DNA from: Euprymna scolopes
Lineage: Eukaryota
Direction: 5' to 3' (one strand)
Assembly: GCA_053919585.1 (NCBI GenBank)
Contig: CM132801.1
Length of the DNA stretch: 64,000 bases
Made by a program: the position numbers and the translations under genes. Numbering within the stretch: the stretch's first letter is position 1; every line of letters begins with the position of its first letter. Positions 5,550 through 62,733 of the stretch are shown here, in pieces. Under the pieces are notes generated by a model. It made no database searches, had not been told where the DNA came from, and worked only from the letters and a program-made list of their open reading frames with translations.

Positions 5550-6119
5550 CTGGACAAAACTGCTCAAATACTTCATCTTTCAAAACAGAAAGTTCTTCGA
5601 AACCGTTCACCACAAACATATTCTCAGAAATTGGTGCTGATACAATCTGGCCCAATTCAGTCGTGTCTTTTAATCCAATTCCAATACCATAGATGAAGAT
5701 GTTGTCAGCTCTAACCTTTTCAGCTTCAGGAATTGTATCAAACGCATTTACATTTGATACACCATCCGTGATAAGAATAGCAATATTTGGTACTGAAGGT
5801 CTGTCTCCATTCTGTTGTGTAAACATTTGAGTGCGCATAACGTTGAGTCCACCAAAAGTATTTGTACTGCCATAAACATATTGGATCTTCTTTACTGCAT
5901 CTATGATATCTTGTTTTCTGTTATACTCATTCAAGTTGAACTGAATTTCCACATCTGTGCTGTATAGTACAGCACCAAATCGCATATTGCCACTGTCTAT
6001 GTCAGCAACAGATACAAAATCAACAATGAAATCTAACATTTTCTCAAAGTTTGTTGCAGTAACACTAGTGGACGAGTCCAAAATGAAGATGATGTCAGAC
6101 TGAGCATTGGTACATCCAC
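5550..6119 (-). CDS. VWA exon, type A (17th in transcript order)
   Basis: TAG|GT GGA TGT ... TGT CCA G|GTAGAT; 570 nt; DSSTS/T/TDG MIDAS. Confidence 0.93.
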
Positions 6120-7015
6120 CTAAATAATATTGACATAACCAATCACTCAAAAAGAACATTGAAAAATATACTTAGAACACAAACACACATTTACAACCAC
6201 TTGAGACATAACATGACATATATAACCACTTAAAAACAAAACAAAACATATACAGTTGCTGTTCTAAATTTCATCTTGCTGTATTTCTCTCATTTGTTTG
6301 TGGAAAATGTTTTATAAAATTTTATACATGAATATAAACTTACGAAACTTTGGTACTATTAATATTAGAATTTTAATCATCATTTTAATAACAATATAAA
6401 TTTCACACTATTTTATTCCGTTTTTTTTTTTATAGAAACAATTGAATGTTAATTTAACTATATTAACATTTTATTCCATACTATAGTAAATATATAGACG
6501 TCAGGGCATCTTAGAACAATGATAACACGAACAGAAAGGTATTGAAGAAAAGAAAGAATGAGACCAAGCCACAACGGCAGTGACAGAAAAAAAATAAACA
6601 AAAACACTATTAAACATTAATTCCAAATCTATAATTAGATTAGTTTAAAATAACATTTTCGATGTAAAACTCTAATGACAACCAATCTGTACATTTAAGA
6701 AATTAACAGAAAATATCATATATATATATTACGATGAATGGTATAATATTTAATAATTCAATTATTTGTAAGCAAATTTGAATACATCATATAATTACAA
6801 TGTTAAACATAATAACTTATTACTTATAATAATTTGCATAAATAAAAATATGGTCAAAAATTTATTTTATTATAATATTAACCATTATTGGTTATAAAAA
6901 CAATATTAATTATATTAAGGTATATTTTTTAAGTATAAATGATGTAATAATAATGTTTAGGTGTTAGTTTTATATTCATATAAGTGTAAAGAAAATATAT
7001 ATGCAATGATCTCAC

Positions 7016-7084
7016 CTCTTTTAGGAGGAACTGCAGTGATTGGAAATCGAATCACTGGTGTCAGAGATGGTTGTATGGCACCTC
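7016..7084 (-). CDS. 69-nt linker exon GGAIQPSLTPVIRFPITAVPPKR(G)
   Basis: TTTTCTATAAAG| ... AGAG|GTGAGA; phase 1-1; conserved in 7 copies. Confidence 0.88.
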
Positions 7085-8369
7085 CTTTATAGAAAATAAA
7101 ACATATCAACATCTATATATCTGTTTATATTTGCAATTATATAAAAGTTAAATGTATCCATACAACCACATGCCCATCTACTCACTTGAAGCAAGACACA
7201 CCAGGAAAAAATAAATGTGCCACTATATTCACTAGTATCTTTGATATGATAATTAGTATCTCTGCTGTTAAAATATTTTAAAGAAAATTATGCATCGTTT
7301 ATTACAAAATATGAAAGTGTGAAATAGTTTCTTAAATTGCACTTTTAATTGAAAACACATAATATAAAAGCTGCTCGGCAAACATTATCTATTTATGTAC
7401 GAGCATAAAGTGTCTATATTATACATCACATACATATAAGAGTCTATGAAGTTTTTAATTCTCTGAAAATGTTTTATACAATGTATCTTTTTTTAAAATG
7501 TGTCACATTTTATCTTGCCACTGTCGATTCATATGTTTCTAAATCTTGTATAAAATAATCTTCAACGCCTAAGACGTGTTTTAAATATGTTTAATTTTAG
7601 AAATTAGACCCCAAATACTCATATATGAAAATTGATCCCTATCAGCACATAATTAGTCAATAAGTGGCAAAGCTCGTTTTAAAAAAATGAAGCAATCTCT
7701 TTAATTCGAGTAATAAAAATAACTTAATTGGTGTTTATAACATATAATACTTTCAGTATTTTAACCATTAGTTATGAATTGCTTATTTCAATTTACATGT
7801 GAAATACGCTTAGAATTTAGCAAATGGAATATTTGCCCAATCAAGTATTTACAATTTAAAGGAGTAGTTAAAAATGATAGAAAAAAAAGGTATTGTAAAA
7901 GACAGTTACAATCAAAGCAAACACATTTATCACAGTGATGAGAATAGATGAGAATAAGAATGCAAATCGTCCTTAAAATCTAAGAAAATTATTAAGTATA
8001 ATTTTATCTATCAACAAGTTTAAAATATCTTGGAAATCATTTTAAAAATGTATTTACAATGTTTATAAGAAATCATCTAATTACAAATAAAGTCAATGTT
8101 AACTTTAATGTAACAATAATAATTGTACTTGAAAATTGAAATTATCTTGTCATGCATTTTAAATAAAACATGTTTATTAAAATTAATTGATGAAATCTTC
8201 ATTCGTGTAGCATATTTCATAATCACATTTAATTACACAAGCATATTCACAAGCAGGCCTGCACACTTATTAACATATATACTGTGTTAATAGCAATATA
8301 ATATATTACACATAAAAAAATGTAAATATTAATCGATTTGTTTTTAGCGGTAATAATAGTTATACTCGT

Positions 8370-8399
8370 ATCTATGTGGACAAAACTGCTCAAATACTT
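8370..8399 (-). pseudogene. Second copy of the deleted-VWA-exon remnant
   Basis: Same sequence as 4862-4891, offset by 3508 bp. Confidence 0.75.
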
Positions 8400-9050
8400 T
8401 AAATTATCTCATAAATTCCACCATGATTCTTGAGTTGCTTATTACAATTCACACTTGAACACGCTTAGGATTTTGAAAATCAGATATTATTCCTGATAGT
8501 GTATGTACAATTGAAACAAGTAGTTGAAGAAGGATAGAGACAGAAATCGATTGTAAAAGAATATTATAATAAGAAAACATTTATCATATTGAAAGAATAA
8601 ATTAAAAGAGAGAGAATAAATTAAATGAGAAAGCATAGAATCATTAAAACGTAAACAAAATATACAAAAAATGTGTATGCATTAATAGATTGAGAATTAA
8701 AGAAGTCATTCTTAAAATGCTTTTACAATGATATCATCTTAAAAATGACGTAATGTTAGCTGTAATAAAACAGCAACAGTTCATTAAACCTATACAGTAA
8801 TTGAAAATTGTAATTATCTCTGACATTTCATGCAGTTTAAATAAATATATAAACATTGTTTGCTGAAATCTTCATTCATGTAGCACATTTCATTATCACA
8901 TTTAAATTACACTAACATATTCACAAGCACACATGCATGCACTTCATTATATATATTATATTGTTTAATATTAAAATGTAAATGAAATTTGATTTGATTT
9001 AGCAAAGTTAAAAAGCATCATCAAGTGATATTATTCATGCTCATATCTAC

Positions 9051-9620
9051 CTGGACAAAACTGCTCAAATACTTCATCTTTCAAAACAGAAAGTTCATCG
9101 AAACCGTTCACTATAAACATATTCTCAGAAATTGGTGCTGATACAATCTGGCCCAATTCAGTAGTATCAGCTAATCCAATTCCAATACCATAGATGAAGA
9201 TGTTGTCAGCTCTAACCTTTTCAGCTTCAGGAATTGTATCAAACGCATTTACATTTGATACACCATCCGTGATAAGAATAGCAATATTTGGTACTGAAGG
9301 TCTGTCTCCATTCTGTTGTGTAAACATTTGAGTGCGCATAACATTGAGTCCACCAAAAGTATTTGTACTGCCATAAACATATTGGATCTTCTTTACTGCA
9401 TCTATGATATCTTGTTTTCTGTTATACTCATTCAAGTTGAACTGAATTTCCACATCTGTGCTGTATAGTACAGCACCAAATCGCATATTGCCACTGTCTA
9501 TGTCAGCAACGGATACAAAATCAACAATGAAATCTAACATTTTCTCAAAGTTTACTGCAGTAACACTAGTGGACGAGTCCAAAATGAAGACGATGTCAGA
9601 CTGAGCATTGGTACATCCAC
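9051..9620 (-). CDS. VWA exon, type A
   Basis: 570 nt, TAG|...|GTAGAT, intact MIDAS. Confidence 0.93.
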
Positions 9621-13045: not shown

Positions 13046-13114
13046 CTCTTCTGGGAGGGACTGCAGTGATTGGAAATCGAATCACTGGTGTCCGAGATGG
13101 TTGTATGGCACCTC
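13046..13114 (-). CDS. 69-nt linker exon GGAIQPSRTPVIRFPITAVPPRR(G)
   Basis: AAG|...AGAG|GTGAGA; phase 1-1. Confidence 0.88.
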
Positions 13115-15022: not shown

Positions 15023-15592
15023 CTGGACAAAACTGCTCAAATACTTTATCTTTCAAAACAGAAAGTTCATCGAAGGCCTTGATCACAAACATATTCTCAG
15101 AAATTGGTGCTGATACAATCTGGCCCAATTCAGTAGTATCAGCTAATCCAATTCCAATACCATAGATGAGGATGTTGTCAGCTCTAACTTTTTCAGCTTC
15201 AGGAATTGTATCAAACGCATTTACATTTGATACACCATCCGTGATAAGAATAGCAATATTTGGTACTGAAGGTCTGTCTCCATTCTGTTGTGTAAACATT
15301 TGAGTGCGCATAACATTGAGTCCACCAAAAGTATTGGTACTGCCATAAACATATTGGATCTTCTTTACTGCATCTATGATATCTTGTTTTCTGTTATACT
15401 CATTCAAGTTGAACTGAATTTCCACATCTGTGCTGTATAGTACAGCACCAAATCGCATATTGCCACTGTCTATGTCAGCAACGGATACAAAATCAACAAT
15501 GAAATCTAACATTTTCTCAAAGTTTGCAGCAGTAACACTAGTGGACGAGTCCAAAATGAAGACGATGTCAGACTGAGCATTGGTACATCCAC
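15023..15592 (-). CDS. VWA exon, type A
   Basis: 570 nt, TAG|...|GTAGAT, intact MIDAS. Confidence 0.93.
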
Positions 15593-17974: not shown

Positions 17975-18043
17975 CTCTTCTGGGAGGGACCGCAGTGATC
18001 GGAAATCGAATCACTGGTGTCCGAGATGGTTGTATGGCACCTC
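17975..18043 (-). CDS. 69-nt linker exon GGAIQPSRTPVIRFPITAVPPRR(G)
   Basis: AAG|...AGAG|GTGAGG; phase 1-1. Confidence 0.88.
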
Positions 18044-19163: not shown

Positions 19164-19733
19164 CTGGACAAAACTGCTCAAATACTTTCTCTTTCAAAAC
19201 AGAAAGTTCATCGAAGGCCTTGATCACAAACATATTCTCAGAAATTGGTGCTGATACAATCTGGCCCAATTCAGTAGTATCAGCTAATCCAATTCCAATA
19301 CCATAGATGAGGATGTTGTCAGCTCTAACCTTTTCAGCTTCAGGAATTGTATCAAACGCATTTACATTTGATACACCATCCGTGATAAGAATAGCAATAT
19401 TTGGTACTGAAGGTCTGTCTCCATTCTGTTGTGTAAACATTTGAGTGCGCATAACGTTGAGTCCACCAAAAGTATTTGTACTGCCATAAACATATTGGAT
19501 CTTCTTTACTGCATCTATGATATCTTGTTTTCTGTTATACTCATTCAAGTTGAACTGAATTTCCACATCTGTGCTGTATAGTACAGCACCAAATCGCATA
19601 TTGCCACTGTCTATGTCAGCAACGGATACAAAATCAACAATGAAATCTAACATTTTCTCAAAGTTTGCTGCAGTAACACTAGTGGACGAGTCCAAAATGA
19701 AGACGATGTCAGACTGAGCATTGGTACATCCAC
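19164..19733 (-). CDS. VWA exon, type A
   Basis: 570 nt, canonical boundaries, intact MIDAS. Confidence 0.93.
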
Positions 19734-20875: not shown

Positions 20876-20944
20876 CTCTTCTGGGAGGCACCACAGTGAT
20901 CGGAAATCGAATCACTGGTGTCCGAGATGGTTGTATGGCACCTC
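20876..20944 (-). CDS. 69-nt linker exon GGAIQPSRTPVIRFPITVVPPRR(G)
   Basis: AAG|...AGAG|GTGAGG; phase 1-1. Confidence 0.88.
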
Positions 20945-22239: not shown

Positions 22240-22809
22240 CTGGACAAAACTGCTCAAATACTTTCTCTTTCAAAACAGAAAGTTCATCGAAGGCCTTGAT
22301 CACAAACATATTCTCAGAAATTGGTGCTGATACAATCTGGCCCAATTCAGTAGTATCAGCTAATCCAATTCCAATACCATAGATGAGGATGTTGTCAGCT
22401 CTAACCTTTTCAGCTTCAGGAATTGTATCAAACGCATTTACATTTGATACACCATCCGTGATAAGAATAGCAATATTTGGTACTGAAGGTCTGTCTCCAT
22501 TCTGTTGTGTAAACATTTGAGTGCGCATAACGTTGAGTCCACCAAAAGTATTTGTACTGCCATAAACATATTGGATCTTCTTTACTGCATCTATGATATC
22601 TTGTTTTGTGTTATACTCATTCAAGTTGAACTGAATTTCCACATCTGTGCTGTATAGTACAGCACCAAATCGCATATTGCCACTGTCTATGTCAGCAACG
22701 GATACAAAATCAACAATGAAATCTAACATTTTCTCAAAGTTTGCTGCAGTAACACTAGTGGACGAGTCCAAAATGAAGACGATGTCAGACTGAGCATTGG
22801 TACATCCAC
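22240..22809 (-). CDS. VWA exon, type A
   Basis: 570 nt, canonical boundaries, intact MIDAS. Confidence 0.93.
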
Positions 22810-23954: not shown

Positions 23955-24023
23955 CTCTTCTGGGAGGCACCGCAGTGATCGGAAATCGAATCACTGGTGT
24001 CCGAGATGGTTGTATGGCACCTC
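23955..24023 (-). CDS. 69-nt linker exon GGAIQPSRTPVIRFPITAVPPRR(G)
   Basis: AAG|...AGAG|GTGAGG; phase 1-1. Confidence 0.88.
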
Positions 24024-25316: not shown

Positions 25317-25886
25317 CTGGACAAAACTGCTCAAATACTTTATCTTTCAAAACAGAAAGTTCATCGAAGGCCTTGATCACAAACATATTCTCAGAAATTG
25401 GTGCTGATACAATCTGGCCCAATTCAGTAGTATCAGCTAATCCAATTCCAATACCATAGATGAGGATGTTGTCAGCTCTAACCTTTTCAGCTTCAGGAAT
25501 TGTATCAAACGCATTTACATTTGATACACCATCCGTGATAAGAATAGCAATATTTGGTACTGAAGGTCTGTCTCCATTCTGCTGTGTAAACATTTGAGTG
25601 CGCATAACGTTGAGTCCACCAAAAGTATTTGTACTGCCATAAACATATTTGATCTTCTTTACTGCATCTATGATAGCTTGTTTTGTGTTATACTCATTCA
25701 AGTTGAACTGAATTTCCACATCTGTGCTGTATAGTACAGCACCAAATCGCATATTGCCACTGTCTATGTCAGCAACGGATACAAAATCAACAATGAAATC
25801 TAACATTTTCTCAAAGTTTGCTGCAGTAACACTAGTGGACGAGTCCAAAATGAAGACGATGTCAGACTGAGCATTGGTACATCCAC
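25317..25886 (-). CDS. VWA exon, type A
   Basis: 570 nt, canonical boundaries, intact MIDAS. Confidence 0.93.
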
Positions 25887-27032: not shown

Positions 27033-27101
27033 CTCTTCTGGGAGGGACCGCAGTGATTGGAAATCGAATCACTGGTGTCCGAGATGGTTGTATGGCACCT
27101 C
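27033..27101 (-). CDS. 69-nt linker exon GGAIQPSRTPVIRFPITAVPPRR(G)
   Basis: AAG|...AGAG|GTGAGG; phase 1-1. Confidence 0.88.
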
Positions 27102-29048: not shown

Positions 29049-29618
29049 CTGGACAAAACTGCTCAAATACTTTATCTTTCAAAACAGAAAGTTCATCGAA
29101 GGCCTTGATCACAAACATATTCTCAGAAATTGGTGCTGATACAATCTGGCCCAATTCAGTAGTATCAGCTAATCCAATTCCAATACCATAGATGAGGATG
29201 TTGTCAGCTCTAACCTTTTCAGCTTCAGGAATTGTATCAAACGCATTTACATTTGATACACCATCCGTGATAAGAATAGCAATATTTGGTACTGAAGGTC
29301 TGTCTCCATTCTGTTGTGTAAACATTTGAGTGCGCATAACATTGAGTCCACCAAAAGTATTTGTACTGCCATAAACATATTGGATCTTCTTTACTGCATC
29401 TATGATATCTTGTTTTCTGTTATACTCATTCAAGTTGAACTGAATTTCCACATCTGTGCTGTATAGTACAGCACCAAATCGCATATTGCCACTGTCTATG
29501 TCAGCAACGGATACAAAATCAACAATGAAATCTAACATTTTCTCAAAGTTTGCTGCAGTAACACTAGTGGACGAGTCCAAAATGAAGACGATGTCAGACT
29601 GAGCATTGGTACATCCAC
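29049..29618 (-). CDS. VWA exon, type A
   Basis: 570 nt, canonical boundaries, intact MIDAS. Confidence 0.93.
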
Positions 29619-30761: not shown

Positions 30762-30830
30762 CTCTTCTGGGAGGCACCGCAGTGATCGGAAATCGAATCA
30801 CTGGTGTCCGAGATGGTTGTATGGCACCTC
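30762..30830 (-). CDS. 69-nt linker exon GGAIQPSRTPVIRFPITAVPPRR(G)
   Basis: AAG|...AGAG|GTGAGG; phase 1-1. Confidence 0.88.
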
Positions 30831-32100: not shown

Positions 32101-32670
32101 CTGGACAAAACTGTTCAAATACTTTATCTTTCAAAACAGAAAGTTCATCGAAGGCCTTGATCACAAACATATTCTCAGAAATTGGTGCTGATACAATCTG
32201 GCCCAATTCAGTAGTATCAGCTAATCCAATTCCAATACCATAGATGAGGATGTTGTCAGCTCTAACCTTTTCAGCTTCAGGAATTGTATCAAACGCATTT
32301 ACATTTGATACACCATCCGTGATAAGAATAGCAATATTTGGTACTGAAGGTCTGTCTCCATTCTGTTGTGTAAACATTTGAGTGCGCATAACGTTGAGTC
32401 CACCAAAAGTATTTGTACTGCCATAAACATATTTGATCTTCTTTACTGCATCTATGATATCTTGTTTTCTGTTATACTCATTCAAGTTGAACTGAATTTC
32501 CACATCTGTGCTGTATAGTACAGCACCAAATCGCATATTGCCACTGTCTATGTCAGCAACGGATACAAAATCAACAATGAAATCTAACATTTTCTCAAAG
32601 TTTGCTGCAGTAACACTAGTGGACGAGTCCAAAATGAAGACGATGTCAGACTGAGCATTGGTACATCCAC
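32101..32670 (-). CDS. VWA exon, type A (first of the A block)
   Basis: 570 nt, canonical boundaries, intact MIDAS. Confidence 0.93.
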
Positions 32671-33829
32671 CTAAAGAATATTGATATAACCAATCACTCA
32701 AGGAGAACATTGAGAAATATGACAACATACACAACTACTTGAACAGAAAATAACAAATTCACAACTACTTACAACACAATGTTACATATACAACCAATTA
32801 AAACAAACAATTACAGATAAAGAAAGAACCCATGATGCTTTCTCATTCGTTATTGATGTGTATGGTTCTCATATTTAAGAACACTATGGAGATGGACATT
32901 CATTAATGTAGGAGATAAGGTAACATTATTATAATAATACATATTTTTTCACCATTAACTATTATATTCAGAAAAGCCAATAAAAACTTTAAATTTTTTG
33001 CATTGATTATTTTATATTAATACTAAGCAAATTGTAGTACATTCCAAACAATGACAAGCACAATAAAATACATATTCGAAAAGCAATTGGAATGCAAAGA
33101 ACAAAACAAAAACATAAGACGTTCTTAATAACCACCGACAGCAATAAAAAACAGAAAACCATCAAAAATTTGATTTGATTACATAAGATCTGCTACTACA
33201 GATTAAATTTTCCATTACAAGTAAGTATGTTCTTTCGAACCTATTTACTTGTTAGAAAGGCAGTAATATACAATAAATTATACACTGTCTATTTTTAACA
33301 TGAATTTAATATGATTGATTTAACCAATATTGTATACAATCTAAAATTTTATTGACAAACATTATATTTTACCATTGGTAATTGATGTACATCATGGAAT
33401 TCTGTAGTAAACTGACAATTGTATACAGTGAACACAACTGACCAAAATGAGACAGGTACAAGGACGTTCATCTTTTTATTTCTGACAAAAATTGATTAAA
33501 AAATAAATGTGACACCATAAAGAAATAACAAAGATGGATCATATATATTACACGTATACAACATAAAATCCAGCTACGAATACAGCATACAAACATGAAC
33601 AAAACATGAGCAACGTTTTATGTTATAATAATACAATCCTCCATCTTTTCTTTAAATCTTGAAAATATGCATTTTAAATTACATATAATGCAAAATGTAA
33701 TATTTATCTCCTTATTTTTTTTCGCTATGTATTCAATTTTTTAACATTTTGTTGTTTTTTATCTATTCAAACAAACATTCTACAAAAGCCCTAAAAAAGT
33801 AAAATTCAACACAGAATGTTTCTACAATA

Positions 33830-33910
<81 letters not shown>
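33830..33910. repeat. (CA)n microsatellite
   Basis: Directly visible. Confidence 0.98.
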
Positions 33911-33911
<1 letters not shown>

Positions 33912-36900: not shown

Positions 36901-37520
36901 GTCACAAAATAAAATAAAACGATTGTGAATTCCTTGTAAAATATGTATGAGATTTAACATTACTTCTCAAAAACAGAAGTGAAAAATAGCTGCAGAAATT
37001 CCCTTGACTATTAGCCATAATCTTATGCAACTTCTGCACACTATTTCAGACACATTAGGTCGTTATAATAAAATGCTACATTGCATCCTAGGAGCAACAC
37101 CATCACAATCGCAAACTCTCCAGAGGAAGGAGTTCCAAATTTTCCTCGTAAGTATTTAGTCCTCCCACCAGCATCAGTCAACACTGGACGGAAATCTATC
37201 CTTTCTGTAGTAATTGTAATTTCACCGATCGTAACTGGCCCATAAACACATAGACATAACATATTGTTTCCAATTTCCGATTCATAAATAATAACAGCTT
37301 CCTTGGCATAGTCTGCCCATTCTAATTGGCTGAGACCTGACATTCACATATTCCGGAATTAAAAAATTTCCTGCATAAACGAACATTTCAAAAAGTTTAC
37401 AAAGTGGCGTCGCTTTTAACAGGAGACAATAGTGCTAAAAGAATACAAACATATTAACCGCTCCCAAACATAAAATTAAATACTGGTAACTTTTATTACT
37501 GGAACAAACGTGCAAAAGTA

Positions 37521-37523
<3 letters not shown>

Positions 37524-37582
<59 letters not shown>
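37524..37582. repeat. (TA)n microsatellite
   Basis: Directly visible. Confidence 0.98.
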
Positions 37583-37584
<2 letters not shown>

Positions 37585-38189
37585 CGTCTTTTTCATCTTT
37601 ACTTGCACATCCAGCAATGGTTTGGGAATGTAACCATGCACAAAATACCTACACGCCGTATCCCCCCCCAAACACCAGCCCTAAAAGATAAAATCCATTT
37701 ATGCATAGCAATATTTATTTTTTGATTTTGGAACGATTATCGACCCTTACAGGATGTTATATTTGTTTTGTTTTTCTTTGCTTTTTTTTTGGCCATTTAC
37801 TATTCCTGTGGATGATTTGATTTACTTTTATATTTTTCACCGATTACTTATGCTTGGGGTTGGGTTGGGATGGGGTTAATTTTTACATTAGGTCTACCTC
37901 CAAAAATTTTTTTTTTAAATGATGACATGTATAGGTTTTCGACTTCGTTGATCAAGAAAATCTCATTCAAATTTTGCAGAGACAAGTACTTTTCAAGATA
38001 TAAAGACCTGTATTATGCACTGTAATTCACTGGCTGCCAAGTTTGTATGCATGCATGATAAATAATTCTACTTCTCTCCCACCAACACTGCCACACCCCA
38101 ATTTTTTAATAGCATTTGCAGGTGGGTATGCTGACAATGAATATCACGGTTAAATTTGGAGTAAATTTTTTCACCCCCCCCCCCAAATG

Positions 38190-38348
38190 GAGTGTCTACT
38201 CCAAAAGTCATCCTTAACATAGGGAGGGTGTGGGTGTCTATTCCGAAAGCTGTTCTTAACATGAGGAGGTTGAGAGTGTCTATTTCGAAAGCTGTTCTTA
38301 ACATGGGTCAGTTGAGGGAGTTTATTCCAAAAGCTGTTCTTAACATGA
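38190..38348. repeat. 42-bp minisatellite, about 3.8 copies
   Basis: cttaacat recurs at 38213, 38255, 38297 and 38339. Confidence 0.9.
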
Positions 38349-38764
38349 CATTACTCAAAGAAGTGAAAATAGTCATAATTGTTTTGTTTTACAAGTGAAA
38401 AAAAAAAAAGAAAATATAAAACTGGAATGTAATTTAATACTATTTATTGGAAGATTTGAAAAGAAGAGGAAAACTTAACCACAAGGACTGCTAACACTGA
38501 TTTCGATCACTCGAAACAGTTACTATGCAGTGAGAATCCCTAACTTCAGAAAACTTCTGTTTTAATTCCTATTATTATCCTAACGGACCATTTTTTTGTA
38601 ATTTTATTAATTCATAAAGATTTACGCATTCCCTTAATTGCTCTTCTTAAACAGTACTTGCAGGTTATCATCACAAACCAGCACTAATCGGCAGTAGAAG
38701 ACAGATTATTAAATTTCAGCCAATGCCACCAGTGTCCGCAATTGTCCAAGGACAGAGTGGCTAG

Positions 38765-38795
38765 CAACAACAACAACAACAACAACAACAACAAC
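38765..38795. repeat. (CAA)n microsatellite
   Basis: Directly visible. Confidence 0.95.
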
Positions 38796-38995
38796 CATAG
38801 TTTAATTTTTTACGAGAGGTGGGGATATCAGGCTTCCACCAGGCAACGCCGGTTAATGGGTACTGATAGTTGGTAATATAGGTGAAAATGAAAGAGGAAA
38901 TATATTTGTAAATAGCAGGAAAATAAAATATATTTTAAATGAAATTTAAAGAAAAGAAAATGTAAATAAATATAATGATTGCTGGTTATATCTAC

Positions 38996-39565
38996 CTGGA
39001 CAAAATTGCTCAAGTATGTTCTCTTCCAAAGTTTTGAGTGCTTGGAAGTCATCAACTACAAACATATTGTTAGAGATGGGTCGAGAAACAATCTGGCTCA
39101 GTTCTGTTGTCTCAGCCAAGCCAATACCAACTGCATATATATGAATTTTGTCAGCTCTTGTCCTTTCAGCCTCCGGAATTGTTTCAAATGCGTTGACATT
39201 TGATACACCATCAGTGAGAAGAATTGCGATGTTGGGAACTGAAGGTCTATCTCCATTCTGCTGTGTAAACATTTGAGTGCGCGTAATATGAAGTCCACCA
39301 TAAGTGTTTGTACTGCCATAGACATATGGAATGTTCCTGACTGCATTTATTATATCTTGTTTTGTGTGATATTCATTCAAGTGGAATTGGATTTGAACGT
39401 CCGTGCTATAAAGAACAGCACCAATACGCACGTTGCCACTGTTGATATCAGCAACAGATACAAAATGAGCAATAAAATCTAGCATTTTCTGAAAATTTGG
39501 TGCAGTGACACTAGTTGAAGAATCCAAAATGAAGACGATGTCAGACTCAGCACGGCCACATCCAC
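38996..39565 (-). CDS. VWA exon, type B (last of the B block)
   Basis: TGTAG|GT GGA TGT GGC ... CCA G|GTAGAT; 570 nt; intact MIDAS. Confidence 0.93.
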
Positions 39566-40858: not shown

Positions 40859-40894
40859 CCTTAGGTGGTATAGGAACAGGCATAGTTCTGGGTG
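40859..40894 (-). CDS. 36-nt linker exon APRTMPVPIPPK(G)
   Basis: TTCTTCTCCAG|...AAGG|GTAAGA; phase 1-1. Confidence 0.88.
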
Positions 40895-42430: not shown

Positions 42431-43000
42431 CTGAGCAAAACTGATCAAGTATGTTCTCTTCCAAAGTTTTGAGTGCTTGGAAGTCATCAACTACAAACAT
42501 GTTGTCAGAGATGGGTCGAGAAACAATCTGGCTCAGTTCTGTGGTCTCAGCCAAGCCAATACCAACTGCATATATATGAATGTTGTCAGCTCTTGTCCTT
42601 TCAGCCTCCGGAATTGTTTCAAATGCGTTGACATTTGATACACCATCAGTGAGAAGAATTGCAATGTTGGGAACTGAAGGTCTATCTCCATTCTGCTGTG
42701 TAAACATTTGAGTGCGCGTAATATGAAGTCCACCATAAGTGTTTGTACTGCCATAGACATATGGAATGTTCCTGACTGCATTTATTATATCTTGTTTTGT
42801 GTGATATTCATTCAAGTGGAATTGGATTTGAACGTCCGTGCTATAAAGAACAGCACCAATACGCACGTTGCCACTGTTGATATCAGCAACAGATACAAAA
42901 TGAGCAATAAAATCTAGCATTTTCTGAAAATTTGGTGCAGTGACACTAGTTGAAGAATCCAAAATGAAGACGATGTCAGACTCAGCATGGCCACATCCAC
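42431..43000 (-). CDS. VWA exon, type B
   Basis: 570 nt, TAG|...|GTAGCT, intact MIDAS. Confidence 0.93.
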
Positions 43001-44209: not shown

Positions 44210-44245
44210 CCTTAGGCGGTATGGGAACAGGAATAGTTCTGGGAG
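44210..44245 (-). CDS. 36-nt linker exon APRTIPVPIPPK(G)
   Basis: CCAG|...|GTAAGA; phase 1-1. Confidence 0.88.
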
Positions 44246-45982: not shown

Positions 45983-46552
45983 CTGAGCAAAACTGATCAA
46001 GTATGTTCTCTTCCAAAGTTTTGAGTGCTTGGAAGTCATCAACTACAAACATGTTGTCAGAGATGGGTCGAGAAACAATCTGGCTCAGCTCTGTGATCTC
46101 AGCCAAACCAATACCAACTGCATATATATGAATGTTGTCAGCTCTTGTCCTGTCAGCCTCCGGAATTGTTTCAAATGCGTTGACATTTGATACACCATCA
46201 GTGAGAAGAATTGCAATGTTGGGAACTGAAGGTCTATCTCCATTCTGCTGTGTAAACATTTGAGTGCGCGTAATATGAAGTCCACCATAAGTGTTTGTAC
46301 TGCCATAGACATATGGAATGTTCCTGACTGCATTTATTATATCTTGTTTTGTGTGATATTCATTCAAGTGGAATTGGATTTGAACGTCCGTGCTATAAAG
46401 AACAGCACCAATACGCACGTTGCCACTGTTGATATCAGCAACAGATACAAAATGAACAATAAAATCTAGCATTTTCTGAAAATTTGGTGCAGTGACACTA
46501 GTTGAAGAATCCAAAATGAAGACGATGTCAGACTCAGCATGGCCACATCCAC
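45983..46552 (-). CDS. VWA exon, type B
   Basis: 570 nt, TAG|...|GTAGCT, intact MIDAS. Confidence 0.93.
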
Positions 46553-47136: not shown

Positions 47137-47172
47137 CCTTAGGTGGTAAAGAAACGGTTGTAGTTCTGGGAG
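47137..47172 (-). CDS. 36-nt linker exon APRTTTVSLPPK(G)
   Basis: CCAG|...|GTAAGA; phase 1-1. Confidence 0.86.
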
Positions 47173-48056: not shown

Positions 48057-48116
48057 CTCTTGTTGTAAGCGCCAGAGTTGTTGGTCTTGGAGCTATGGTT
48101 CTCTCTCTCTTAGCTT
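48057..48116 (-). CDS. Unique 60-nt linker exon EAKRERTIAPRPTTLALTTR(G)
   Basis: TTTTCTCTTTCAACAAAG|...AGAG|GTGAGA; phase 1-1; open frame; GC-richer island. Confidence 0.7.
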
Positions 48117-48849: not shown

Positions 48850-49419
48850 CTGGACAAAATTGATCAAGTATGTTCTCTTCCAATGTTTTGAGTGCTTGGA
48901 AGTCATCAACTACAAACATGTTGTCAGAGATTGGTCGAGAAACAATCTGGCTCAGTTCTGTGGTCTCAGCCAAGCCAATACCAACTGCATATATATGAAT
49001 GTTGTCAGCTCTTGTCCTTTCAGCCTCGGGAATTGTTTCAAATGCGTTGACATTTGATACACCATCAGTGAGAAGAATTGCAATGTTGGGAACTGAAGGT
49101 CTATCTCCATTCTGCTGTGTAAACATTTGAGTGCGCGTAATATGAAGTCCACCATAAGTGTTTGTACTGCCATAGACATATGAAATATTCCTGACTGCAT
49201 TTATTATATCTTGTTTTGTGTGATATTCATTCAAGTGGAATTGGATTTGAACGTCTGTGCTATAAAGAACAGCACCAATACGCACGTTGCCACTGTTGAT
49301 ATCAACAACAGATACAAAATGAACAATAAAATCTAGCATTTTCTGAAAATTTGGTGCAGTGACACTAGTTGAAGAATCCAAAATGAAGACGATGTCAGAC
49401 TCAGCATGGCCACATCCAC
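48850..49419 (-). CDS. VWA exon, type B
   Basis: 570 nt, TAG|...|GTAGCT, intact MIDAS. Confidence 0.93.
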
Positions 49420-50121: not shown

Positions 50122-50157
50122 CCTTAGTTGGTATAGGAACAGGAGTAGTTCTGGGAG
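50122..50157 (-). CDS. 36-nt linker exon APRTTPVPIPTK(G)
   Basis: CCAG|...|GTAAGA; phase 1-1. Confidence 0.88.
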
Positions 50158-50967: not shown

Positions 50968-51537
50968 CTGAACAAAACTGATCAAGTATGTTCTCTTCCA
51001 AAGTTTTGAGTGCTTGGAAGTCATCAACTACAAACATGTTGTCAGAGATTGGTCGAGAAACAATCTGGCTCAGTTCTGTTGTCTCAGCCAAGCCAATACC
51101 AACTGCATATATATGAATTTTGTCAGCTCTTGTCCTTTCAGCCTCGGGAATTGTTTCAAAAGCGTTGACATTTGATACACCATCAGTGAGAAGAATTGCA
51201 ATGTTGGGAACTGAAGGTCTATCTCCATTCTGCTGTGTAAACATTTGAGTGCGCGTAATATGAAGTCCACCATAAGTGTTTGTACTGCCATAGACATATG
51301 GAATGTTCCTGACTGCATTTATTATATCTTGTTTTGTGTGATATTCATTCAAGTGGAATTGGATTTGAACGTCTGTGCTATAAAGAACAGCACCGATACG
51401 CACGTTGCCACTGTTGATATCAGCAACAGATACAAAATGAACAATAAAATCTAGCATTTTCTGAAAATTTGGTGCAGTGACACTAGTTGAAGAATCCAAA
51501 ATGAAGACGATGTCAGACTCAGCATGGCCACATCCAC
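50968..51537 (-). CDS. VWA exon, type B
   Basis: 570 nt, TAG|...|GTAGCT, intact MIDAS. Confidence 0.93.
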
Positions 51538-52225: not shown

Positions 52226-52261
52226 CCTTAGGTGGTATAGGAACAGGAGTAGTTCTGGGAG
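52226..52261 (-). CDS. 36-nt linker exon APRTTPVPIPPK(G)
   Basis: CCAG|...|GTAAGA; phase 1-1. Confidence 0.88.
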
Positions 52262-53839: not shown

Positions 53840-54409
53840 CTGAACAAAACTGATCAAGTATGTTCTCTTCCAAAGTTTTGAGTGCTTGGAAGTCATCAAC
53901 TACAAACATGTTGTCAGAGATTGGTCGAGAAACAATCTGGCTCAGTTCTGTTGTCTCAGCCAAGCCAATACCAACTGCATATATATGAATGTTGTCAGCT
54001 CTTGTCCTGTCAGCCTCGGGAATTGTTTCAAAAGCGTTGACATTTGATACACCATCAGTGAGAAGAATTGCAATGTTGGGAACTGAAGGTCTATCTCCAT
54101 TCTGCTGTGTAAACATTTGAGTGCGCGTAATATGAAGTCCACCATAAGTGTTTGTACTGCCATAGACATATGAAATATTCCTGACTGCATTTATTATATC
54201 TTGTTTTGTGTGATATTCATTCAAGTGGAATTGGATTTGAACGTCCGTGCTATAAAGAACAGCACCAATACGCACGTTGCCACTGTTGATATCAGCAACA
54301 GATACAAAATGAACAATAAAATCTAGCATTTTCTGAAAATTTGGTGCAGTGACACTAGTTGAAGAATCCAAAATGAAGACGATGTCAGACTCAGCATGGC
54401 CACATCCAC
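53840..54409 (-). CDS. VWA exon, type B
   Basis: 570 nt, TAG|...|GTAGCT, intact MIDAS. Confidence 0.93.
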
Positions 54410-55098: not shown

Positions 55099-55134
55099 CC
55101 TTAGGTGGTATAGGAACAGGAGTAGTTCTGGGAG
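55099..55134 (-). CDS. 36-nt linker exon APRTTPVPIPPK(G)
   Basis: Identical to 52226-52261. Confidence 0.88.
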
Positions 55135-56363: not shown

Positions 56364-56712
56364 CATATACGTACAAATTTATTATGTATTATTTTAAAAC
56401 TATTTAATACTGTTTTTCTTTAACTGTCTATCATTTATTTTTTTTACTAATCTTAGTAATCTAAGATTATGTCAGGTGTTTGAAAATGGTGAAAATGATA
56501 AACTTTATGTAAATAATAAAAGTTAAAATAAGAAAAACAAAAAAAAATTAAGTTTGTTAGAATGGTGTTATCCATGAGTAAATAAGAGTAAAAGAAAGAG
56601 AAAAAATAATATAAAATATAGATTAGAGAGCCAGATAGGAAACTGTGTAAGTAGGAGATGGAAAATATAAACAGGAGATATGTTAAAAAAGTTATAACAT
56701 TTGTATAGCTAC

Positions 56713-57282
56713 CTGAACAAAACTGATCAAGTATGTTCTCTTCCAAAGTTTTGAGTGCTTGGAAGTCATCAACTACAAACATGTTGTCAGAGATTGGTCG
56801 AGAAACAATCTGGCTCAGTTCTGTTGTCTCAGCCAAGCCAATACCAACTGCATATATATGAATTTTGTCAGCTCTTGTCCTTTCAGCCTCGGGAATTGTT
56901 TCAAATGCGTTGACATTTGATACACCATCAGTGAGAAGAATTGCAATGTTGGGAACTGAAGGTCTATCTCCATTCTGCTGTGTAAACATTTGAGTGCGCG
57001 TAATATGAAGTCCACCATAAGTGTTTGTACTGCCATAGACATATGGAATGTTCCTGACTGCATTTATTATATCTTGTTTTGTGTGATATTCATTCAAGTG
57101 GAATTGGATTTGAACGTCCGTGCTATAAAGAACAGCACCAATACGCACGTTGCCACTGTTGATATCAGCAACAGATACAAAATGAACAATAAAATCTAGC
57201 ATTTTCTGAAAATTTGGTGCAGTGACACTAGTTGAAGAATCCAAAATGAAGACGATGTCAGACTCAGCATGGCCACATCCAC
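56713..57282 (-). CDS. VWA exon, type B
   Basis: 570 nt, TAG|...|GTAGCT, intact MIDAS. Confidence 0.93.
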
Positions 57283-57973: not shown

Positions 57974-58009
57974 CCTTAGGTGGTATAGGAACAGGACTAG
58001 TTCTGGGAG
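57974..58009 (-). CDS. 36-nt linker exon APRTSPVPIPPK(G)
   Basis: CCAG|...|GTAAGA; phase 1-1. Confidence 0.88.
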
Positions 58010-58917: not shown

Positions 58918-59487
58918 CTGAACAAAACTGATCAAGTATGTTCTCTTCCAAAGTTTTGAGTGCTTGGAAGTCATCAACTACAAACATGTTGTCAGAGATG
59001 GGTCGAGAAACAATCTGTCTCAGTTCTGTGGTCTCAGCCAAGCCGATACCAACTGCATATATATGGATGTTGTCAGCTCTTGTCCTTTCAGCCTCGGGAA
59101 TTGTTTCAAATGCGTTGACATTTGATACACCATCAGTGAGAAGAATTGCAATGTTGGGAACTGAAGGTCTATCTCCATTCTGTTGTGTAAACATTTGAGT
59201 ACGCGTAATATGAAGTCCACCATAAGTGTTTGTACTGCCATAGACATATGGAATGTTCCTGACTGCATTTATTATATCTTGTTTTGTGTGATATTCATTC
59301 AAGTGGAATTGGATTTGAACGTCTGTGCTATAAAGAACAGCACCAATACGCACGTTGCCACTGTTGATATCAGCAACAGATACAAAATGAGCAATAAAAT
59401 CTAGCATTTTCTGAAAATTTGGTGCAGTGACACTAGTTGAAGAATCCAAAATGAAGACGATGTCAGACTCAGCATGGCCACATCCAC
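58918..59487 (-). CDS. VWA exon, type B
   Basis: 570 nt, TAG|...|GTAGCT, intact MIDAS. Confidence 0.93.
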
Positions 59488-60199: not shown

Positions 60200-60235
60200 C
60201 CTTAGGTGGTATAGAAACAGGAGTAGTTCTGGGAG
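60200..60235 (-). CDS. 36-nt linker exon APRTTPVSIPPK(G)
   Basis: CCAG|...|GTAAGA; phase 1-1. Confidence 0.88.
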
Positions 60236-61272
60236 CTGGAGAAAAATAAAACAGTACATTCATAAAATATCGTTTAGATCTATAAGACTGTTAAACATAA
60301 ATATAATTAATATTGACAAAAATGTTTTTAAAGCGTATAATATAATTTTTGTTATTTGTTTTTTGTATGATTAGTACATATTAAATGGTTTAATCGACTT
60401 GAATCTGAAAGAAGCAGGTAGTATGTCTAACAATAGAACAATAGACCACCGTACTAAAGATTATGCAACATAAATATAATAACCTACATAATTCTGGATA
60501 TTCATTAAAAATCTGATGTATACGATAAACATTTTTTGTCGTCTACCTTTACATTTTAACCAGTTTATTAGTCCCAATAACTTTTTACAACAGAGGATGT
60601 GTTTTGTATATTTTAAAGATTGTTATATTAATAACTAACATCGTTACTCTTCCACAGCATATTTGCTTATTCCACAATGAATCTATTCAACATTCAAGAA
60701 AGAGATATCAAGTAAATTAAAAATAAAATTCATGGGAACTATTGCTGAATAATATCTCTTATGTTTGGATGTTTATTTTGTGAAACAAAGCATTCTTAAG
60801 ATAAGAAAATCTTAGGAAAAGTTAAAACATATGTCACATTTTTACCACTAACTTGCATGAGTACGAATTTACAAAAATAAATGATGAGACAGTTTATAGA
60901 CTATTAAACTTTCACAATTTTACGTTTCATCGTCTATTAAAGTCTATTTGAAATTAACTGTAACAAAAAGCTAAGATTAATCAATTAAATCTCTTTGCAA
61001 AGATCAATAGTTGGATAACGCCCATATGAATACAGTCTATAAAGGTGAATCTAAATATAAAGTATAATATAAAATAATGAGAAACAAAAATTATTGCGAG
61101 TAAAAACAGAAAAAGAACAGGAAATTAATCAGGTGATAATGGTGTAATCCATAAGCGAATAAGAGAAAATTAAAAGAATAATAATAGCAAAGAATAGACT
61201 AGACAGACAGATAAGCAGAGGTGTAGACACAAGATGGAAAATGAAAAAAAGTCATAAGATTTGAATAGCTAC

Positions 61273-61842
61273 CTTGACAAAACTGATCAAGTATGTTTTC
61301 TTCCAAAGTTTTGAGTGCTTGGAAGTCATCAACTACAAACATGTTTTCGGAGATGGGTCGAGAAACAATCTGGCTCAGTTCTGTGGTCTCAGCCAAGCCA
61401 ATACCAACTGCATATATATGAATGTTGTCAGCTCTTGTCCTTTCAGCCTCGGGAATTGTTTCAAATGCGTTGACATTTGATACACCATCAGTGAGAAGAA
61501 TTGCAATGTTGGGAACTGAAGGTCTATCTCCATTCTGCTGTGTAAACATTTGAGTGCGCGTAATATGAAGTCCACCATAAGTGTTTGTACTGCCATAGAC
61601 ATATGGAATGTTCCTGACTGCATTTATTATATCTTGTTTTGTGTGATATTCATTCAAGTGGAATTGGATTTGAACGTCCGTGCTATAAAGAACAGCACCA
61701 ATACGCACGTTGCCACTGTTGATATCAGCAACAGATACAAAATGAGCAATAAAATCTAGCATTTTCTGAAAATTTGGTGCAGTGACACTAGTTGAAGAAT
61801 CCAAAATGAAGACGATGTCAGACTCAGCACGGCCACATCCAC
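61273..61842 (-). CDS. VWA exon, type B (first VWA exon in the window in transcript order)
   Basis: 570 nt, TAG|...CAA G|GTAGCT, intact MIDAS. Confidence 0.93.
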
Positions 61843-62697
61843 CTACAGAATACGGACAGAATCTTTCACTCAAGATAAAGATTCGATTCAAAACGCAAAT
61901 AATAATGAAGAAACAAAGAATCACTAAAGAAATGAGAAAAGTTTTATTTTAATTTGAACGAAATTATTCACGTAGGAATTACATTACAAGTGACAATACA
62001 TAATAGGACACGCGTAACAAAGCAGTCGCTTTACTTATATGCACAGAACAACAGTACAATATGATTACAGACTGGCTTATTATCAATTTATCATCCACTT
62101 TCATTGAATGATAATTTTCATATTATCTTAATCTGATGCAAATTATTTTTGAACGAATTACATAAATTACAACACACAGAAGAAAACTGAGAGAACGTAA
62201 GTTACAAAGAAGTCGGTTATTATTACAAATATATTTAGTGTTATTAGTGTACAGAAAAGACAGTAATCGGTTTCTCATTGTCAAATAATAATTTCCACAT
62301 TATTAGTATCACACATATATATTAAGCATCGGCATGTTAACAGTTGCTAACTACATGAATATAGGAAACGGAACAAAACCAGGTATGAACTATGGGAGCA
62401 CGAGACATTAAAAAAATAATATCACATGATCATCAATATATACAACAGAACAAAACAAGAATAACGCTACATAAACAAAAGTCAAACGAGGTAAATCAAT
62501 GAATTACAGAAACAGAACAGGATGCTACTACCTGTCAAACTAAAACAAACGTAAGATAGATGGACAAACATTACCTAAACACCAACTATTACAAATACTT
62601 GTGTAAAATACAATTGTCTAAGAACATGGCTATTTCATAAGAACAATAAACAGAAAATACACGTAGTTAAGATGTAGACGTAGAACAAATGTCTTAC

Positions 62698-62733
62698 CCT
62701 TAGGAGTTATAGGAACAGGAGTAGTTCTGGGTG
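62698..62733 (-). CDS. 36-nt linker exon APRTTPVPITPK(G)
   Basis: CCAG|...|GTAAGA; phase 1-1, which implies further upstream exons outside the window. Confidence 0.88.

What the first reader, a model, noticed from the sequence alone, without database searches (positions are those of the whole stretch)
5550..62733. Giant beads-on-a-string protein of at least 17 near-identical, MIDAS-intact VWA domains built from a two-exon cassette
Seen: 17 exons of exactly 570 nt alternate with Pro-rich micro-exons, giving about 3,519 aa of open frame with no other domain type and no visible ends. Every copy keeps DxSxS/T/TDG and the terminal Cys pair. Known: VWA domains with a MIDAS bind ligands through divalent cations, and the terminal disulfide is as in matrilin and VWF A1/A3 domains. 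Familiar multi-VWA proteins (collagen VI chains, matrilins, mussel PTMP1, shell BMSP) have fewer or much more divergent repeats. Inference: a lineage-specific multivalent matrix, adhesive, mucus or egg-coat polymer that automated annotation would probably split or mislabel as collagen VI-like.
Basis: partly seen in the sequence, partly recalled or inferred. Interest (0 to 1): 0.85.

Follow-up and report, generated by a model that had tools for sequence, protein, structure and literature searches.

The report
Tandem VWA-domain matrix gene, cephalopod
The window holds a real, expressed run of 17 almost identical VWA (metal-dependent adhesion) domain exons joined by tiny proline-rich exons in a cuttlefish-like mollusc; it belongs to a widespread but unstudied molluscan family of bead-like matrix or mucus proteins, and it is probably not always made as one giant chain.

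Summary
Observation confirmed. On the minus strand lie 17 VWA exons of exactly 570 nt, all phase 1-1 with AG/GT sites. They form two blocks: 8 type A and 9 type B, 95-100% identical within a block and about 75% between blocks. They alternate with 7 micro-exons of 69 nt and 9 of 36 nt. The spliced model is open for 3,498 aa. Every copy keeps the MIDAS residues and the terminal Cys pair. Both N gaps are intronic.

The genome adds 3 more A and 1 more B exon. A Pro/Thr mucin-like exon series lies downstream, and about 46 VWA exons sit on one strand over about 460 kb.

Interpretation partly supported. PolyA RNA runs hold both exon types, but one run holds B without A, so the blocks may be separate genes or isoforms. 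No linker exists at the B/A boundary.

The design is not unusual. Annotated gastropod, bivalve and fish proteins carry 7-12 near-identical VWA domains with Pro/Thr linkers.

The exons are 97-100% identical inside introns that are only 60-80% identical. This points to exon-confined concerted evolution.

The likely product is a secreted, multivalent, cation-dependent matrix or mucus glycoprotein. New member of a known kind; moderate interest.

The parts
62698..62733 (-). linker B micro-exon, 36 nt (APRTTPVPITPK)
   Evidence: AG/GTAAGA sites, phase 1-1
61273..61842 (-). VWA exon B9, 570 nt
60200..60235 (-). linker B micro-exon, 36 nt
58918..59487 (-). VWA exon B8, 570 nt
57974..58009 (-). linker B micro-exon, 36 nt
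56713..57282 (-). VWA exon B7, 570 nt
   Evidence: its 31-mers are held by polyA RNA runs
55099..55134 (-). linker B micro-exon, 36 nt
53840..54409 (-). VWA exon B6, 570 nt
   Evidence: the introns of the B6 and B7 units are 99.7% identical
52226..52261 (-). linker B micro-exon, 36 nt
50968..51537 (-). VWA exon B5, 570 nt
50122..50157 (-). linker B micro-exon, 36 nt
48850..49419 (-). VWA exon B4, 570 nt
47137..47172 (-). linker B micro-exon, 36 nt
45983..46552 (-). VWA exon B3, 570 nt
44210..44245 (-). linker B micro-exon, 36 nt
42431..43000 (-). VWA exon B2, 570 nt
40859..40894 (-). linker B micro-exon, 36 nt
38996..39565 (-). VWA exon B1, the last of the B block; its 3' end and donor flank look like type A
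32671..38995 (-). B/A boundary interval, 6,325 nt. It holds no linker exon. A dispersed repeat lies at about 37000-38880. Only its last 150 nt resemble A introns. It is either a plain intron or a gene boundary.
32101..32670 (-). VWA exon A8, the first of the A block
30762..30830 (-). linker A micro-exon, 69 nt
29049..29618 (-). VWA exon A7, 570 nt
27033..27101 (-). linker A micro-exon, 69 nt
25317..25886 (-). VWA exon A6, 570 nt
23955..24023 (-). linker A micro-exon, 69 nt
22240..22809 (-). VWA exon A5, 570 nt
20876..20944 (-). linker A micro-exon, 69 nt
19164..19733 (-). VWA exon A4, 570 nt
   Evidence: its 31-mers are held by RNA runs
17975..18043 (-). linker A micro-exon, 69 nt
15023..15592 (-). 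VWA exon A3, 570 nt
13046..13114 (-). linker A micro-exon, 69 nt, lying between the two N gaps
9051..9620 (-). VWA exon A2, 570 nt
7016..7084 (-). linker A micro-exon, 69 nt (the PPKR variant)
5550..6119 (-). VWA exon A1, the last one in the window; three more A exons follow outside it

Best explanation
The window is an internal part of a cephalopod cluster of tandem VWA exons. It encodes secreted, non-collagenous 'beads-on-a-string' glycoprotein(s) of the molluscan family that annotators call 'collagen alpha-3(VI)-like' or 'COL6A'.

Shown:
- Each bead is one 570-nt phase 1-1 exon. It encodes a complete VWA domain with all five MIDAS residues and a Cys near each end.
- The beads are joined by Pro-rich micro-exons of 12 or 23 residues.
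- There are two blocks in the genome, 10 type B upstream and 11 type A downstream. Nine B and eight A lie in the window.
- Both exon types are present in polyA RNA data and evolve under purifying selection.
- The exons are kept 97-100% identical while their introns have drifted to 60-80% identity.

Inferred:
- The exons are spliced in series.
- The A block continues into a Pro/Thr-rich, presumably O-glycosylated mucin-like stalk.
- The product is secreted. Its many cation-loaded MIDAS sites bind acidic groups on partners such as collagen, other matrix fibres or surfaces, so the chain acts as a high-avidity cross-linker in a matrix, mucus, adhesive or egg-coat material.
- The B and A blocks are not always co-expressed, so they are either two adjacent genes or alternative isoforms rather than one obligatory chain of 17 or more domains.
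- The near-identity of the exons is maintained by gene conversion largely confined to exons.
For: - Exon anatomy and open frame.
- VWA identity: Pfam E 6e-43 and 1e-44. The best solved relatives are collagen VI alpha-3 and mussel PTMP1.
- MIDAS: D14, S16, S18, T85 and D118 align with integrin alpha-M D140, S142, S144, T209 and D242.
- Selection: dN/dS is 0.18 between A and B, 0.19 within B and 0.47 within A.
- Linkers behave as exons. They are conserved islands, 95% and 90% identical against 71-78% in their flanks, and their changes are mostly synonymous.
- Expression: the B7 exon is held at 0.73-0.89 of sampled words, and the A4 exon at 0.74-0.87, by runs recorded as polyA or oligo-dT RNA from several studies.
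- Block-wise expression: X2 holds B at 0.85 and A at 0.00.
- Real copies, not assembly echoes: most introns differ in length and are only 70-93% identical.
- Family: Haliotis XP_048237149 has a signal peptide, 7 identical VWA domains with 'ATTPLPPK' linkers, then EGF repeats. Sinanodonta KAL3854705 has 8 VWA domains with Pro/Thr linkers. Pomacea, Biomphalaria, Elysia and Argopecten have relatives at 45-58% identity.
- Mucin-like continuation: phase 1-1 Pro/Thr micro-exons and a 420-nt (PPPPPPTTTTV)x12 exon lie downstream of the last A exon.
- Same B-then-A order in a related cephalopod assembly.
- In the tree the A and B clades predate the species split, yet the copies cluster by species.
Against: - No read-level evidence of any splice junction. 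A scan of JGI contigs for a spliced junction found nothing.
- Neither a signal-peptide exon nor a stop exon was found for these blocks. Secretion is inferred only from relatives.
- The tissue and the binding partner are unknown, and no paper on this protein was found.
- The B-without-A evidence rests on one run measured for both exon types. Its RNA label is the tool's guess, and a share of 0.00 is 'no proof of absence'.
- The B1-to-A8 junction would be the only one without a linker.
Confidence: 0.7

Rival explanations
1. One obligatory giant polypeptide contains all 17 domains in the window (21 or more in the genome), with B1 spliced directly to A8.
For: All exons are phase 1-1 and lie on one strand, and the direct B1-to-A8 join is in frame. 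The last 150 nt of the boundary interval are a normal A-type intron end, and the B1 donor flank is A-like. No convincing signal-peptide or terminal exon lies in the boundary. Runs X12, X13, X16 and X7 hold both exon types. The B-then-A order is conserved in a relative.
Against: X2 holds 0.85 of the B words and 0.00 of the A words. 3' bias cannot explain this, because A lies 3' of B. The boundary is the only junction without a linker, and it is a unique 6.3-kb interval carrying a transposon.
Confidence: 0.25
2. The A block is a polyprotein. The dibasic PPRR/PPKR at the end of every A linker would be cut by a proprotein convertase, releasing VWA monomers of about 21 kDa.
For: All 10 A linkers end in RR or KR directly before the next domain. 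The same idea appears in an earlier first-reader note, s1-241479.
Against: The B linkers end in a single Lys (PPK). The linkers near the C-type exon (VVPLTRTQPPRT, VPVRPRTTPVV) and the linkers of relatives lack dibasic ends. There is no Arg at P4 as furin prefers. Pro-rich linkers are the family norm for intact multi-domain proteins. No proteomic data were available.
Confidence: 0.07
3. Most copies are assembly artefacts, from over-expansion of a collapsed repeat or from duplicated haplotypes.
For: The B6 and B7 units are nearly the same length and their introns are 99.7% identical. Two N gaps lie in one A intron.
Against: The other units have introns of different length (1.5-5.4 kb) that are only 70-93% identical over the parts that align. 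Each exon also has its own substitutions. A related species' assembly shows the same kind of array.
Confidence: 0.04
4. The array is a decaying, untranslated set of exon duplicates.
For: No gene ends were found, and there is no read-level splice evidence.
Against: There are no stops or frameshifts in 33 exons, and every splice site is intact. dN/dS is 0.18-0.47. RNA runs hold the exons.
Confidence: 0.02

Closest known systems
Molluscan multi-VWA proteins annotated 'collagen alpha-3/4(VI) chain-like', 'COL6A' or uncharacterised. Examples: Haliotis rufescens XP_048237149.1, Sinanodonta woodiana KAL3854705.1, Argopecten irradians XP_069108493.1, and relatives in Pomacea, Biomphalaria and Elysia.
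   Same: They are tandem VWA domains, 45-58% identical to these. Each domain is bracketed by Cys and joined by short Pro/Thr-rich linkers. Within one protein the copies are often near-identical (7-12 copies at 95% or more). Pro/Thr-rich stretches follow the array.
   Different: This locus has two blocks of 10 and 11 copies. No EGF or SRCR exons were found within the 164 kb examined. The function of these relatives is also untested.
Octopus bimaculoides VWFA domain-containing protein A0A0L8FLC0 (1,580 aa)
   Same: It comes from the same gene cluster. It maps collinearly, at 54-74% identity, to VWA exons on the same strand 110-200 kb downstream of the window, and its stop lies at C19:145004331-145004918. 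It also has Pro/Thr linkers.
   Different: Its domains are divergent from one another (median 48%). The A and B blocks match it at only about 50% and have no one-to-one counterpart in it.
Proximal thread matrix protein 1 (PTMP1) of the mussel byssus, PDB 4cn8
   Same: It is the second-best solved relative (E 2e-36). It has VWA domains with DxSxS, and its C-terminal Cys aligns with Cys188 here. It is a secreted, load-bearing matrix protein (background in PMC4754843).
   Different: It has two domains, not 17 or more. Identity is about 30%. It has no Pro-rich micro-exon linkers and no mucin-like part.
Collagen VI alpha-3 N-terminal VWA array, PDB 9han
   Same: It is the best solved match (E 3e-116 summed over ten domains). 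It is a long string of VWA domains in an extracellular protein.
   Different: No Gly-X-Y triple-helix exon occurs in any frame of the 164 kb examined. The collagen VI domains diverge from one another, and many lack the full DxSxS motif in the alignments.
Gel-forming and tethered mucins (Pro/Thr/Ser tandem-repeat domains)
   Same: Downstream of the A block lies a 420-nt exon of twelve PPPPPPTTTTV repeats, together with Pro/Thr micro-exons.
   Different: No Cys-rich VWD-, C8-, TIL- or CTCK-like exons were seen. Whether the Pro/Thr exons join the A block in mRNA is inferred.

Membership tests
VWA domain (Pfam PF00092) | Profile match above the curated cut-off over the whole domain | tested here: met
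   147.5 and 153.2 bits against a cut-off of 23.8, covering profile positions 1-171/173 of 174.
MIDAS-bearing VWA / integrin I-domain type | The five metal-coordinating residues: DxSxS, Thr and Asp | tested here: met
   D14, S16, S18, T85 and D118 are invariant in all 17 copies. They align with alpha-M D140, S142, S144, T209 and D242. Actual metal binding was not tested.
VWF-A1/A3 or matrilin type 'stapled' VWA | A disulfide joining the N- and C-terminal ends of the domain | not testable with these tools
   Cys2 and Cys188 are present in every copy and are the only Cys residues. Cys188 aligns with the C-terminal Cys of both PTMP1 domains. That they form a bond is inferred.
Collagen VI chains | A Gly-X-Y triple-helical region | tested here: not met
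   No run of six or more Gly-X-Y triplets occurs in any frame of the 164 kb around the window. The 'COL6A' names of the relatives are annotation by similarity.
Molluscan tandem-VWA / Pro-Thr-linker proteins ('collagen alpha-3(VI)-like') | Serial VWA domains joined by short Pro/Thr linkers, with closest sequence similarity to family members | tested here: met
   The best long hits are all of this kind, at 45-58% identity. The linker style matches, for example Haliotis 'ATTPLPPK' against 'APRTTPVPIPPK' here.
Molluscan tandem-VWA / Pro-Thr-linker proteins | An N-terminal signal peptide (secretion) | tested here: inconclusive
   The Haliotis relative has one. None was found for these blocks: the gene's start lies outside the window, and ab initio scans of the boundary were uninformative.
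Matrilins | EGF domains and a C-terminal coiled coil after one or two VWA domains | tested here: not met
   No EGF-like or Cys-rich exon was found in the 47 kb downstream of the A block that was scanned. tblastn over the whole 164 kb found nothing beyond VWA.
Gel-forming mucins | VWD-C8-TIL assemblies and a CTCK domain flanking the Pro/Thr/Ser repeats | tested here: not met
   Pro/Thr repeat exons are present, but no Cys-rich exons were found.
BMSP / Pif shell-matrix proteins | VWA domains together with chitin-binding domain(s) | tested here: inconclusive
   tblastn with 196 relatives found only VWA exons in the 164 kb. No chitin-binding query was run.

The most novel reading that the evidence does not exclude
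The locus may be a modular system for setting valency. Gene conversion confined to exons would keep three sets of VWA beads (A, B and a flanking E type) nearly identical inside old, diverged introns. All cassettes are phase 1-1, and the blocks are expressed separately (B without A in some samples). The animal could therefore make secreted VWA-mucin chains with different numbers and kinds of beads in different tissues. A further option is that the A block is cut at its PPRR/PPKR sites into monomers.
Probability: 0.2. Interest if true: 0.6.

Novelty: new member of a known kind. Interest (0 to 1): 0.4.

Why it matters
- It documents a very large, intact and expressed array of identical MIDAS-bearing VWA modules plus a mucin-like stalk in a cephalopod. 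Such a protein is a candidate structural component of mucus, adhesive, egg-coat or connective matrix, and is of interest for biomaterials.
- It shows how such genes defeat annotation. The relatives in a cuttlefish genome are filed as 200-290 aa fragments called COL6A.
- It gives a clean case of exon-confined concerted evolution, with a step from about 99% identity in the exons to about 70% in the introns within 100 nt.
- The architecture itself recurs widely in molluscs and even fishes, so this is not a new kind of protein.

Tried and rejected
No junction, depth or transcript-end data exist.
- A degenerate pattern spanning VWA end, linker B and VWA start has no match in the genomic window (the control) and none in JGI metagenome contigs.
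- The look-up of encoding contigs for the related-species ORFs P0001 and P0006 gave gene layouts but no DNA. Cross-species conservation of the micro-exons could therefore not be checked.
- The protein database holds no own-species sequence. Its short hits are ORF calls on genomic DNA that run into introns, not transcripts.
- A search for a degenerate linker in the B/A boundary scored no better than shuffles. Phase 1-1 candidates there are unconvincing.
- Ab initio scans for a signal-peptide first exon gave nothing with strict rules and only microsatellite artefacts with loose rules.
- A search for EGF-like or other Cys-rich exons, a search for Gly-X-Y exons and tblastn with 196 relatives found nothing beyond VWA exons.
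100 kb was then obtained in pieces, so the cluster's outer 300 kb was seen only through genome-search hits.
- Literature searches found no description of this protein. They found only generic mentions of VWA or 'collagen alpha' proteins in octopus and snail mucus proteomes.
It is inferred to be a decapodiform cephalopod from best hits to Acanthosepion pharaonis (70-87%) and from the run labels.

Full report
**What is in the sequence**

The window is AT-rich (29% G+C) and has two N runs. All long ORFs but one lie on the minus strand and are VWA-like. tblastn with one copy of each kind finds exactly 17 full-length matches, each 190 codons, and no partial copies. The flanks show a conserved acceptor (..tag|GTGGATGT) and donor (..CAG|gtag). 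The true exons are therefore 570 nt and phase 1-1, shifted 2 nt from the in-frame coordinates.

The exons form two blocks: eight type A (5550-32670) and nine type B (38996-61842). Identity is 95-100% within a block and about 75% (protein) or 79-80% (DNA) between blocks.

Each interval inside a block holds one micro-exon with AG/GT sites in the same phase:
- Type A: 69 nt, encoding (G)GAIQPSRTPVIRFPITAVPPRR.
- Type B: 36 nt, encoding APRTTPVPIPPK.

Joining the 33 exons gives 10,497 nt, or 3,498 aa without a stop. His total is about 20 aa higher than I can account for.

Every copy has DSSTS at 14-18, Thr85, TDG at 117-119, and Cys only at 2 and 188. Pfam VWA scores E 6e-43 and 1e-44. The five MIDAS residues align with those of integrin alpha-M.

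**The assembly gaps**

Both N runs lie in the 5.4-kb intron between exons 15023-15592 and 9051-9620, one on each side of linker 13046-13114. The readable parts of that intron are collinear with the other A introns: 5' end, linker region, distal part and 3' end follow in order, and nothing is duplicated. No reading frame depends on the gaps, and nothing suggests a hidden cassette. What the gaps contain is unknown.

**Are the copies real?**

Most introns differ in length (1.5-5.4 kb). They align only in part, at 70-93% identity. Only the B6 and B7 units have 99.7% identical introns. That pair is a very recent duplication or, less likely, an assembly doubling.

Identity drops sharply at the exon edges. 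It is 97-100% inside exons, about 92% in the first 50 nt of flank, and 60-80% beyond 100 nt. The micro-exons are also islands, at 95% and 90% identity against 71-78% in their flanks, and their changes are mostly synonymous.

Synonymous divergence within a block is only 0.03-0.05, far below intron divergence. dN/dS is 0.18 between blocks, 0.19 within B and 0.47 within A. So the exons are coding and constrained. Their near-identity is best explained by gene conversion largely confined to exons, not by recent duplication of whole units.

A tree supports concerted evolution. The A copies of this genome form one clade (100/100), sister to A-like exons of other cephalopods. The B copies form one clade (100/99) among B-like exons of other cephalopods.

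In a related cephalopod assembly one B-like ORF recurs with identical translation at least five times, at a spacing of 2.5-2.8 kb. A-like ORFs follow on the same strand. The B-then-A order therefore predates the split between the two species.

**Beyond the window**

The window is C19:145204001-145268000 of a 5.9-Gb genome. On the same strand about 46 VWA exons lie between 144.89 and 145.35 Mb. Fetched flanks show the following:
- Three more A exons and their linkers lie downstream, and one more B exon with its linker lies upstream. This makes 11 A and 10 B.
- More divergent VWA exons lie upstream (64% and 53% identity), with linker-like micro-exons between them.
- Downstream of the last A exon lies a variant linker, then four Pro/Thr-rich phase 1-1 micro-exons with GTAAGA/GTAAGG donors.
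- Next comes a 420-nt exon of twelve PPPPPPTTTTV repeats (L036:7349-7768, minus strand).

No further domain exon was found in the next 47 kb. No Gly-X-Y exon occurs anywhere in the 164 kb.

The Octopus bimaculoides protein A0A0L8FLC0 maps collinearly (54-74%) to the VWA exons at 145.096-145.004 Mb, and its stop lies at 145004331-145004918. The A and B blocks match it at only about 50%. The cluster therefore holds more than one gene, or one gene much larger than the octopus model. The ends of the unit(s) that contain A and B were not found.

**Expression, and one chain or two**

The B7 exon's 31-mers are held at 0.73-0.89 by 19 runs from 10 studies. Six of those runs are recorded as polyA or oligo-dT RNA. 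The A4 exon is held likewise. Runs X12, X13, X16 and X7 hold both.

Run X2 holds 0.85 of the B words and 0.00 of the A words. 3' bias cannot explain this, because A lies 3' of B. Transcripts with B but without A therefore exist.

The 6,325-nt interval between B1 and A8 is unlike all the others:
- It has no linker, not even a remnant.
- A dispersed repeat with about 13,000 candidate copies in the genome lies at about 37000-38880.
- Only its last 150 nt resemble A introns, and the B1 donor flank is A-like.
- I found no convincing terminal or first exon there.

I conclude that the blocks are two transcription units or alternative isoforms (about 65%) rather than one obligatory chain (about 25%). 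The decisive test was laying reads. A scan of JGI contigs for a spliced junction pattern found nothing.

**What it is like**

A search of 1.8 billion representatives gives multi-VWA proteins as the best hits:
- Sinanodonta woodiana 'COL6A' (2,044 aa, 8 domains, 53%).
- Haliotis rufescens LOC124110407 (3,005 aa).
- Proteins with 19-22 VWA domains in amphioxus, fishes, shark and lamprey.

The Haliotis protein has a signal peptide, then seven identical VWA domains joined by 'ATTPLPPK', then about 35 identical EGF repeats. The Sinanodonta protein has near-identical VWA domains with Pro/Thr linkers of about 45 aa, then a Pro/Thr stretch and an SRCR domain.

Counting domains at 95% identity or more to one seed gives: Biomphalaria pfeifferi 12, Elysia crispata 11, a pipefish 11, a prickleback 10, B. 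glabrata 9, Haliotis 7, and this window 9 per block. The design is therefore common in predicted proteomes, and this is a large member of it.

The nearest solved structures are collagen VI alpha-3 and the byssal PTMP1. The lack of any triple-helix exon rules out membership of collagen VI.

**How it most likely works**

Shown: intact domains, intact MIDAS, paired terminal Cys, short Pro-rich spacers, and presence in RNA data.

Inferred from the families involved:
- The chain is secreted, as the Haliotis relative's signal peptide suggests.
- Each domain is closed by a disulfide between its ends, so the beads hang from stiff Pro-rich spacers.
- In sea water or haemolymph every MIDAS is loaded with Mg2+ or Ca2+ and can bind an acidic side chain of a partner.
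- Many identical sites give high avidity and cross-linking.
- The Pro/Thr exons add an O-glycosylated, hydrated stalk.

This fits a matrix, mucus, adhesive or egg-coat material. The tissue is unknown. Octopus skin-mucus and snail-mucus proteomes list VWA and 'collagen alpha-4(VI)-like' proteins, but only generically.

An earlier first-reader note proposed that the PPRR/PPKR ends of the A linkers are cleavage sites. The motif is present in all ten A linkers. It is absent from the B linkers and from relatives. I rate that reading low.

**Verdict**

It overstates both novelty and unity. Similar arrays are widespread, other sequence types follow outside the window, and the two blocks are probably not always in one chain. 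The most interesting aspect is the exon-confined homogenisation. I class it as a new member of a known, functionally unstudied kind, with interest 0.4.

Noticed in passing
L036:7349-7768 (minus strand) = G000:C19:145171349-145171768, 32 kb downstream of the window: A 420-nt phase 1-1 exon encodes twelve PPPPPPTTTTV repeats. Four Pro/Thr-rich micro-exons and a variant A-type linker precede it. Together they form a mucin-like continuation of the A block.
   Followed up: partly
G000:C19:145108830-145109396, 145123224-145123790, 145295742-145296308, 145300830-145301396 (loci L023-L026): A third set of near-identical VWA exons ('E type', 98.4-99.6% identical to each other, 63% to type A) lies on both sides of the A/B blocks, up to 190 kb apart. 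L024 against L025 and L026 is 95.5% identical over 3 kb including introns, which looks like a segmental duplication. L023 shares only about 970 nt with the others.
   Followed up: partly
window 1-4151, + strand: A G+C-rich stretch (up to 55%) carries a gag-like ORF with two CCHC knuckles (21-425) and an RT-like ORF (1190-1486). It is a degenerate LTR-retroelement remnant inside the 8-kb intron after exon A1. The 183-aa minus-strand ORF at 1680-2231 has no Pfam match.
   Followed up: partly
window about 37000-38880: A dispersed repeat with about 13,000 candidate copies in the genome (72-83% identity) begins about 110 nt after the B1 donor. It contains a 42-nt tandem repeat (38192-38347) and an (AT)30 run.
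   Followed up: yes
window 53840-59487: The B6 and B7 cassette units (period 2,872-2,873 nt) have introns 99.7% identical, while their exons differ at 5 of 570 positions. This is the one pair that could be a very recent duplication or an assembly doubling.
   Followed up: partly
window 48057-48092, minus strand: A second linker-like candidate (APRPTTLALTTR, with a poor polypyrimidine tract) lies in the intron between B4 and B3, upstream of the regular linker at 47137-47172. It may be a decayed or alternative micro-exon.
   Followed up: no
The first 15-18 nt of each intron after the A exons, for example window 19146-19163: Read-through after the donor gives ...QFCPGRYEHE-stop in most A copies here. 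Near-identical tails (RYEHD, RYEHV) appear in A-like ORFs of other cephalopods. This may be a conserved splice-site context, or an alternative short C-terminus made by intron retention.
   Followed up: no
L036:238-2814, minus strand: ORFs resembling the endonuclease and reverse transcriptase of a non-LTR retrotransposon (372, 116 and 321 aa) lie in the region after the mucin-like exon.
   Followed up: no
G000: C19:22.06-22.40 Mb, C19:23.41-23.52 Mb, C35, C33, C23, C43, C18, C12: Many further clusters of single-exon VWA modules (27-39% identical to type A) occur elsewhere in the genome, often a dozen or more on one strand. VWA-cassette arrays are a general feature of this genome.
   Followed up: no
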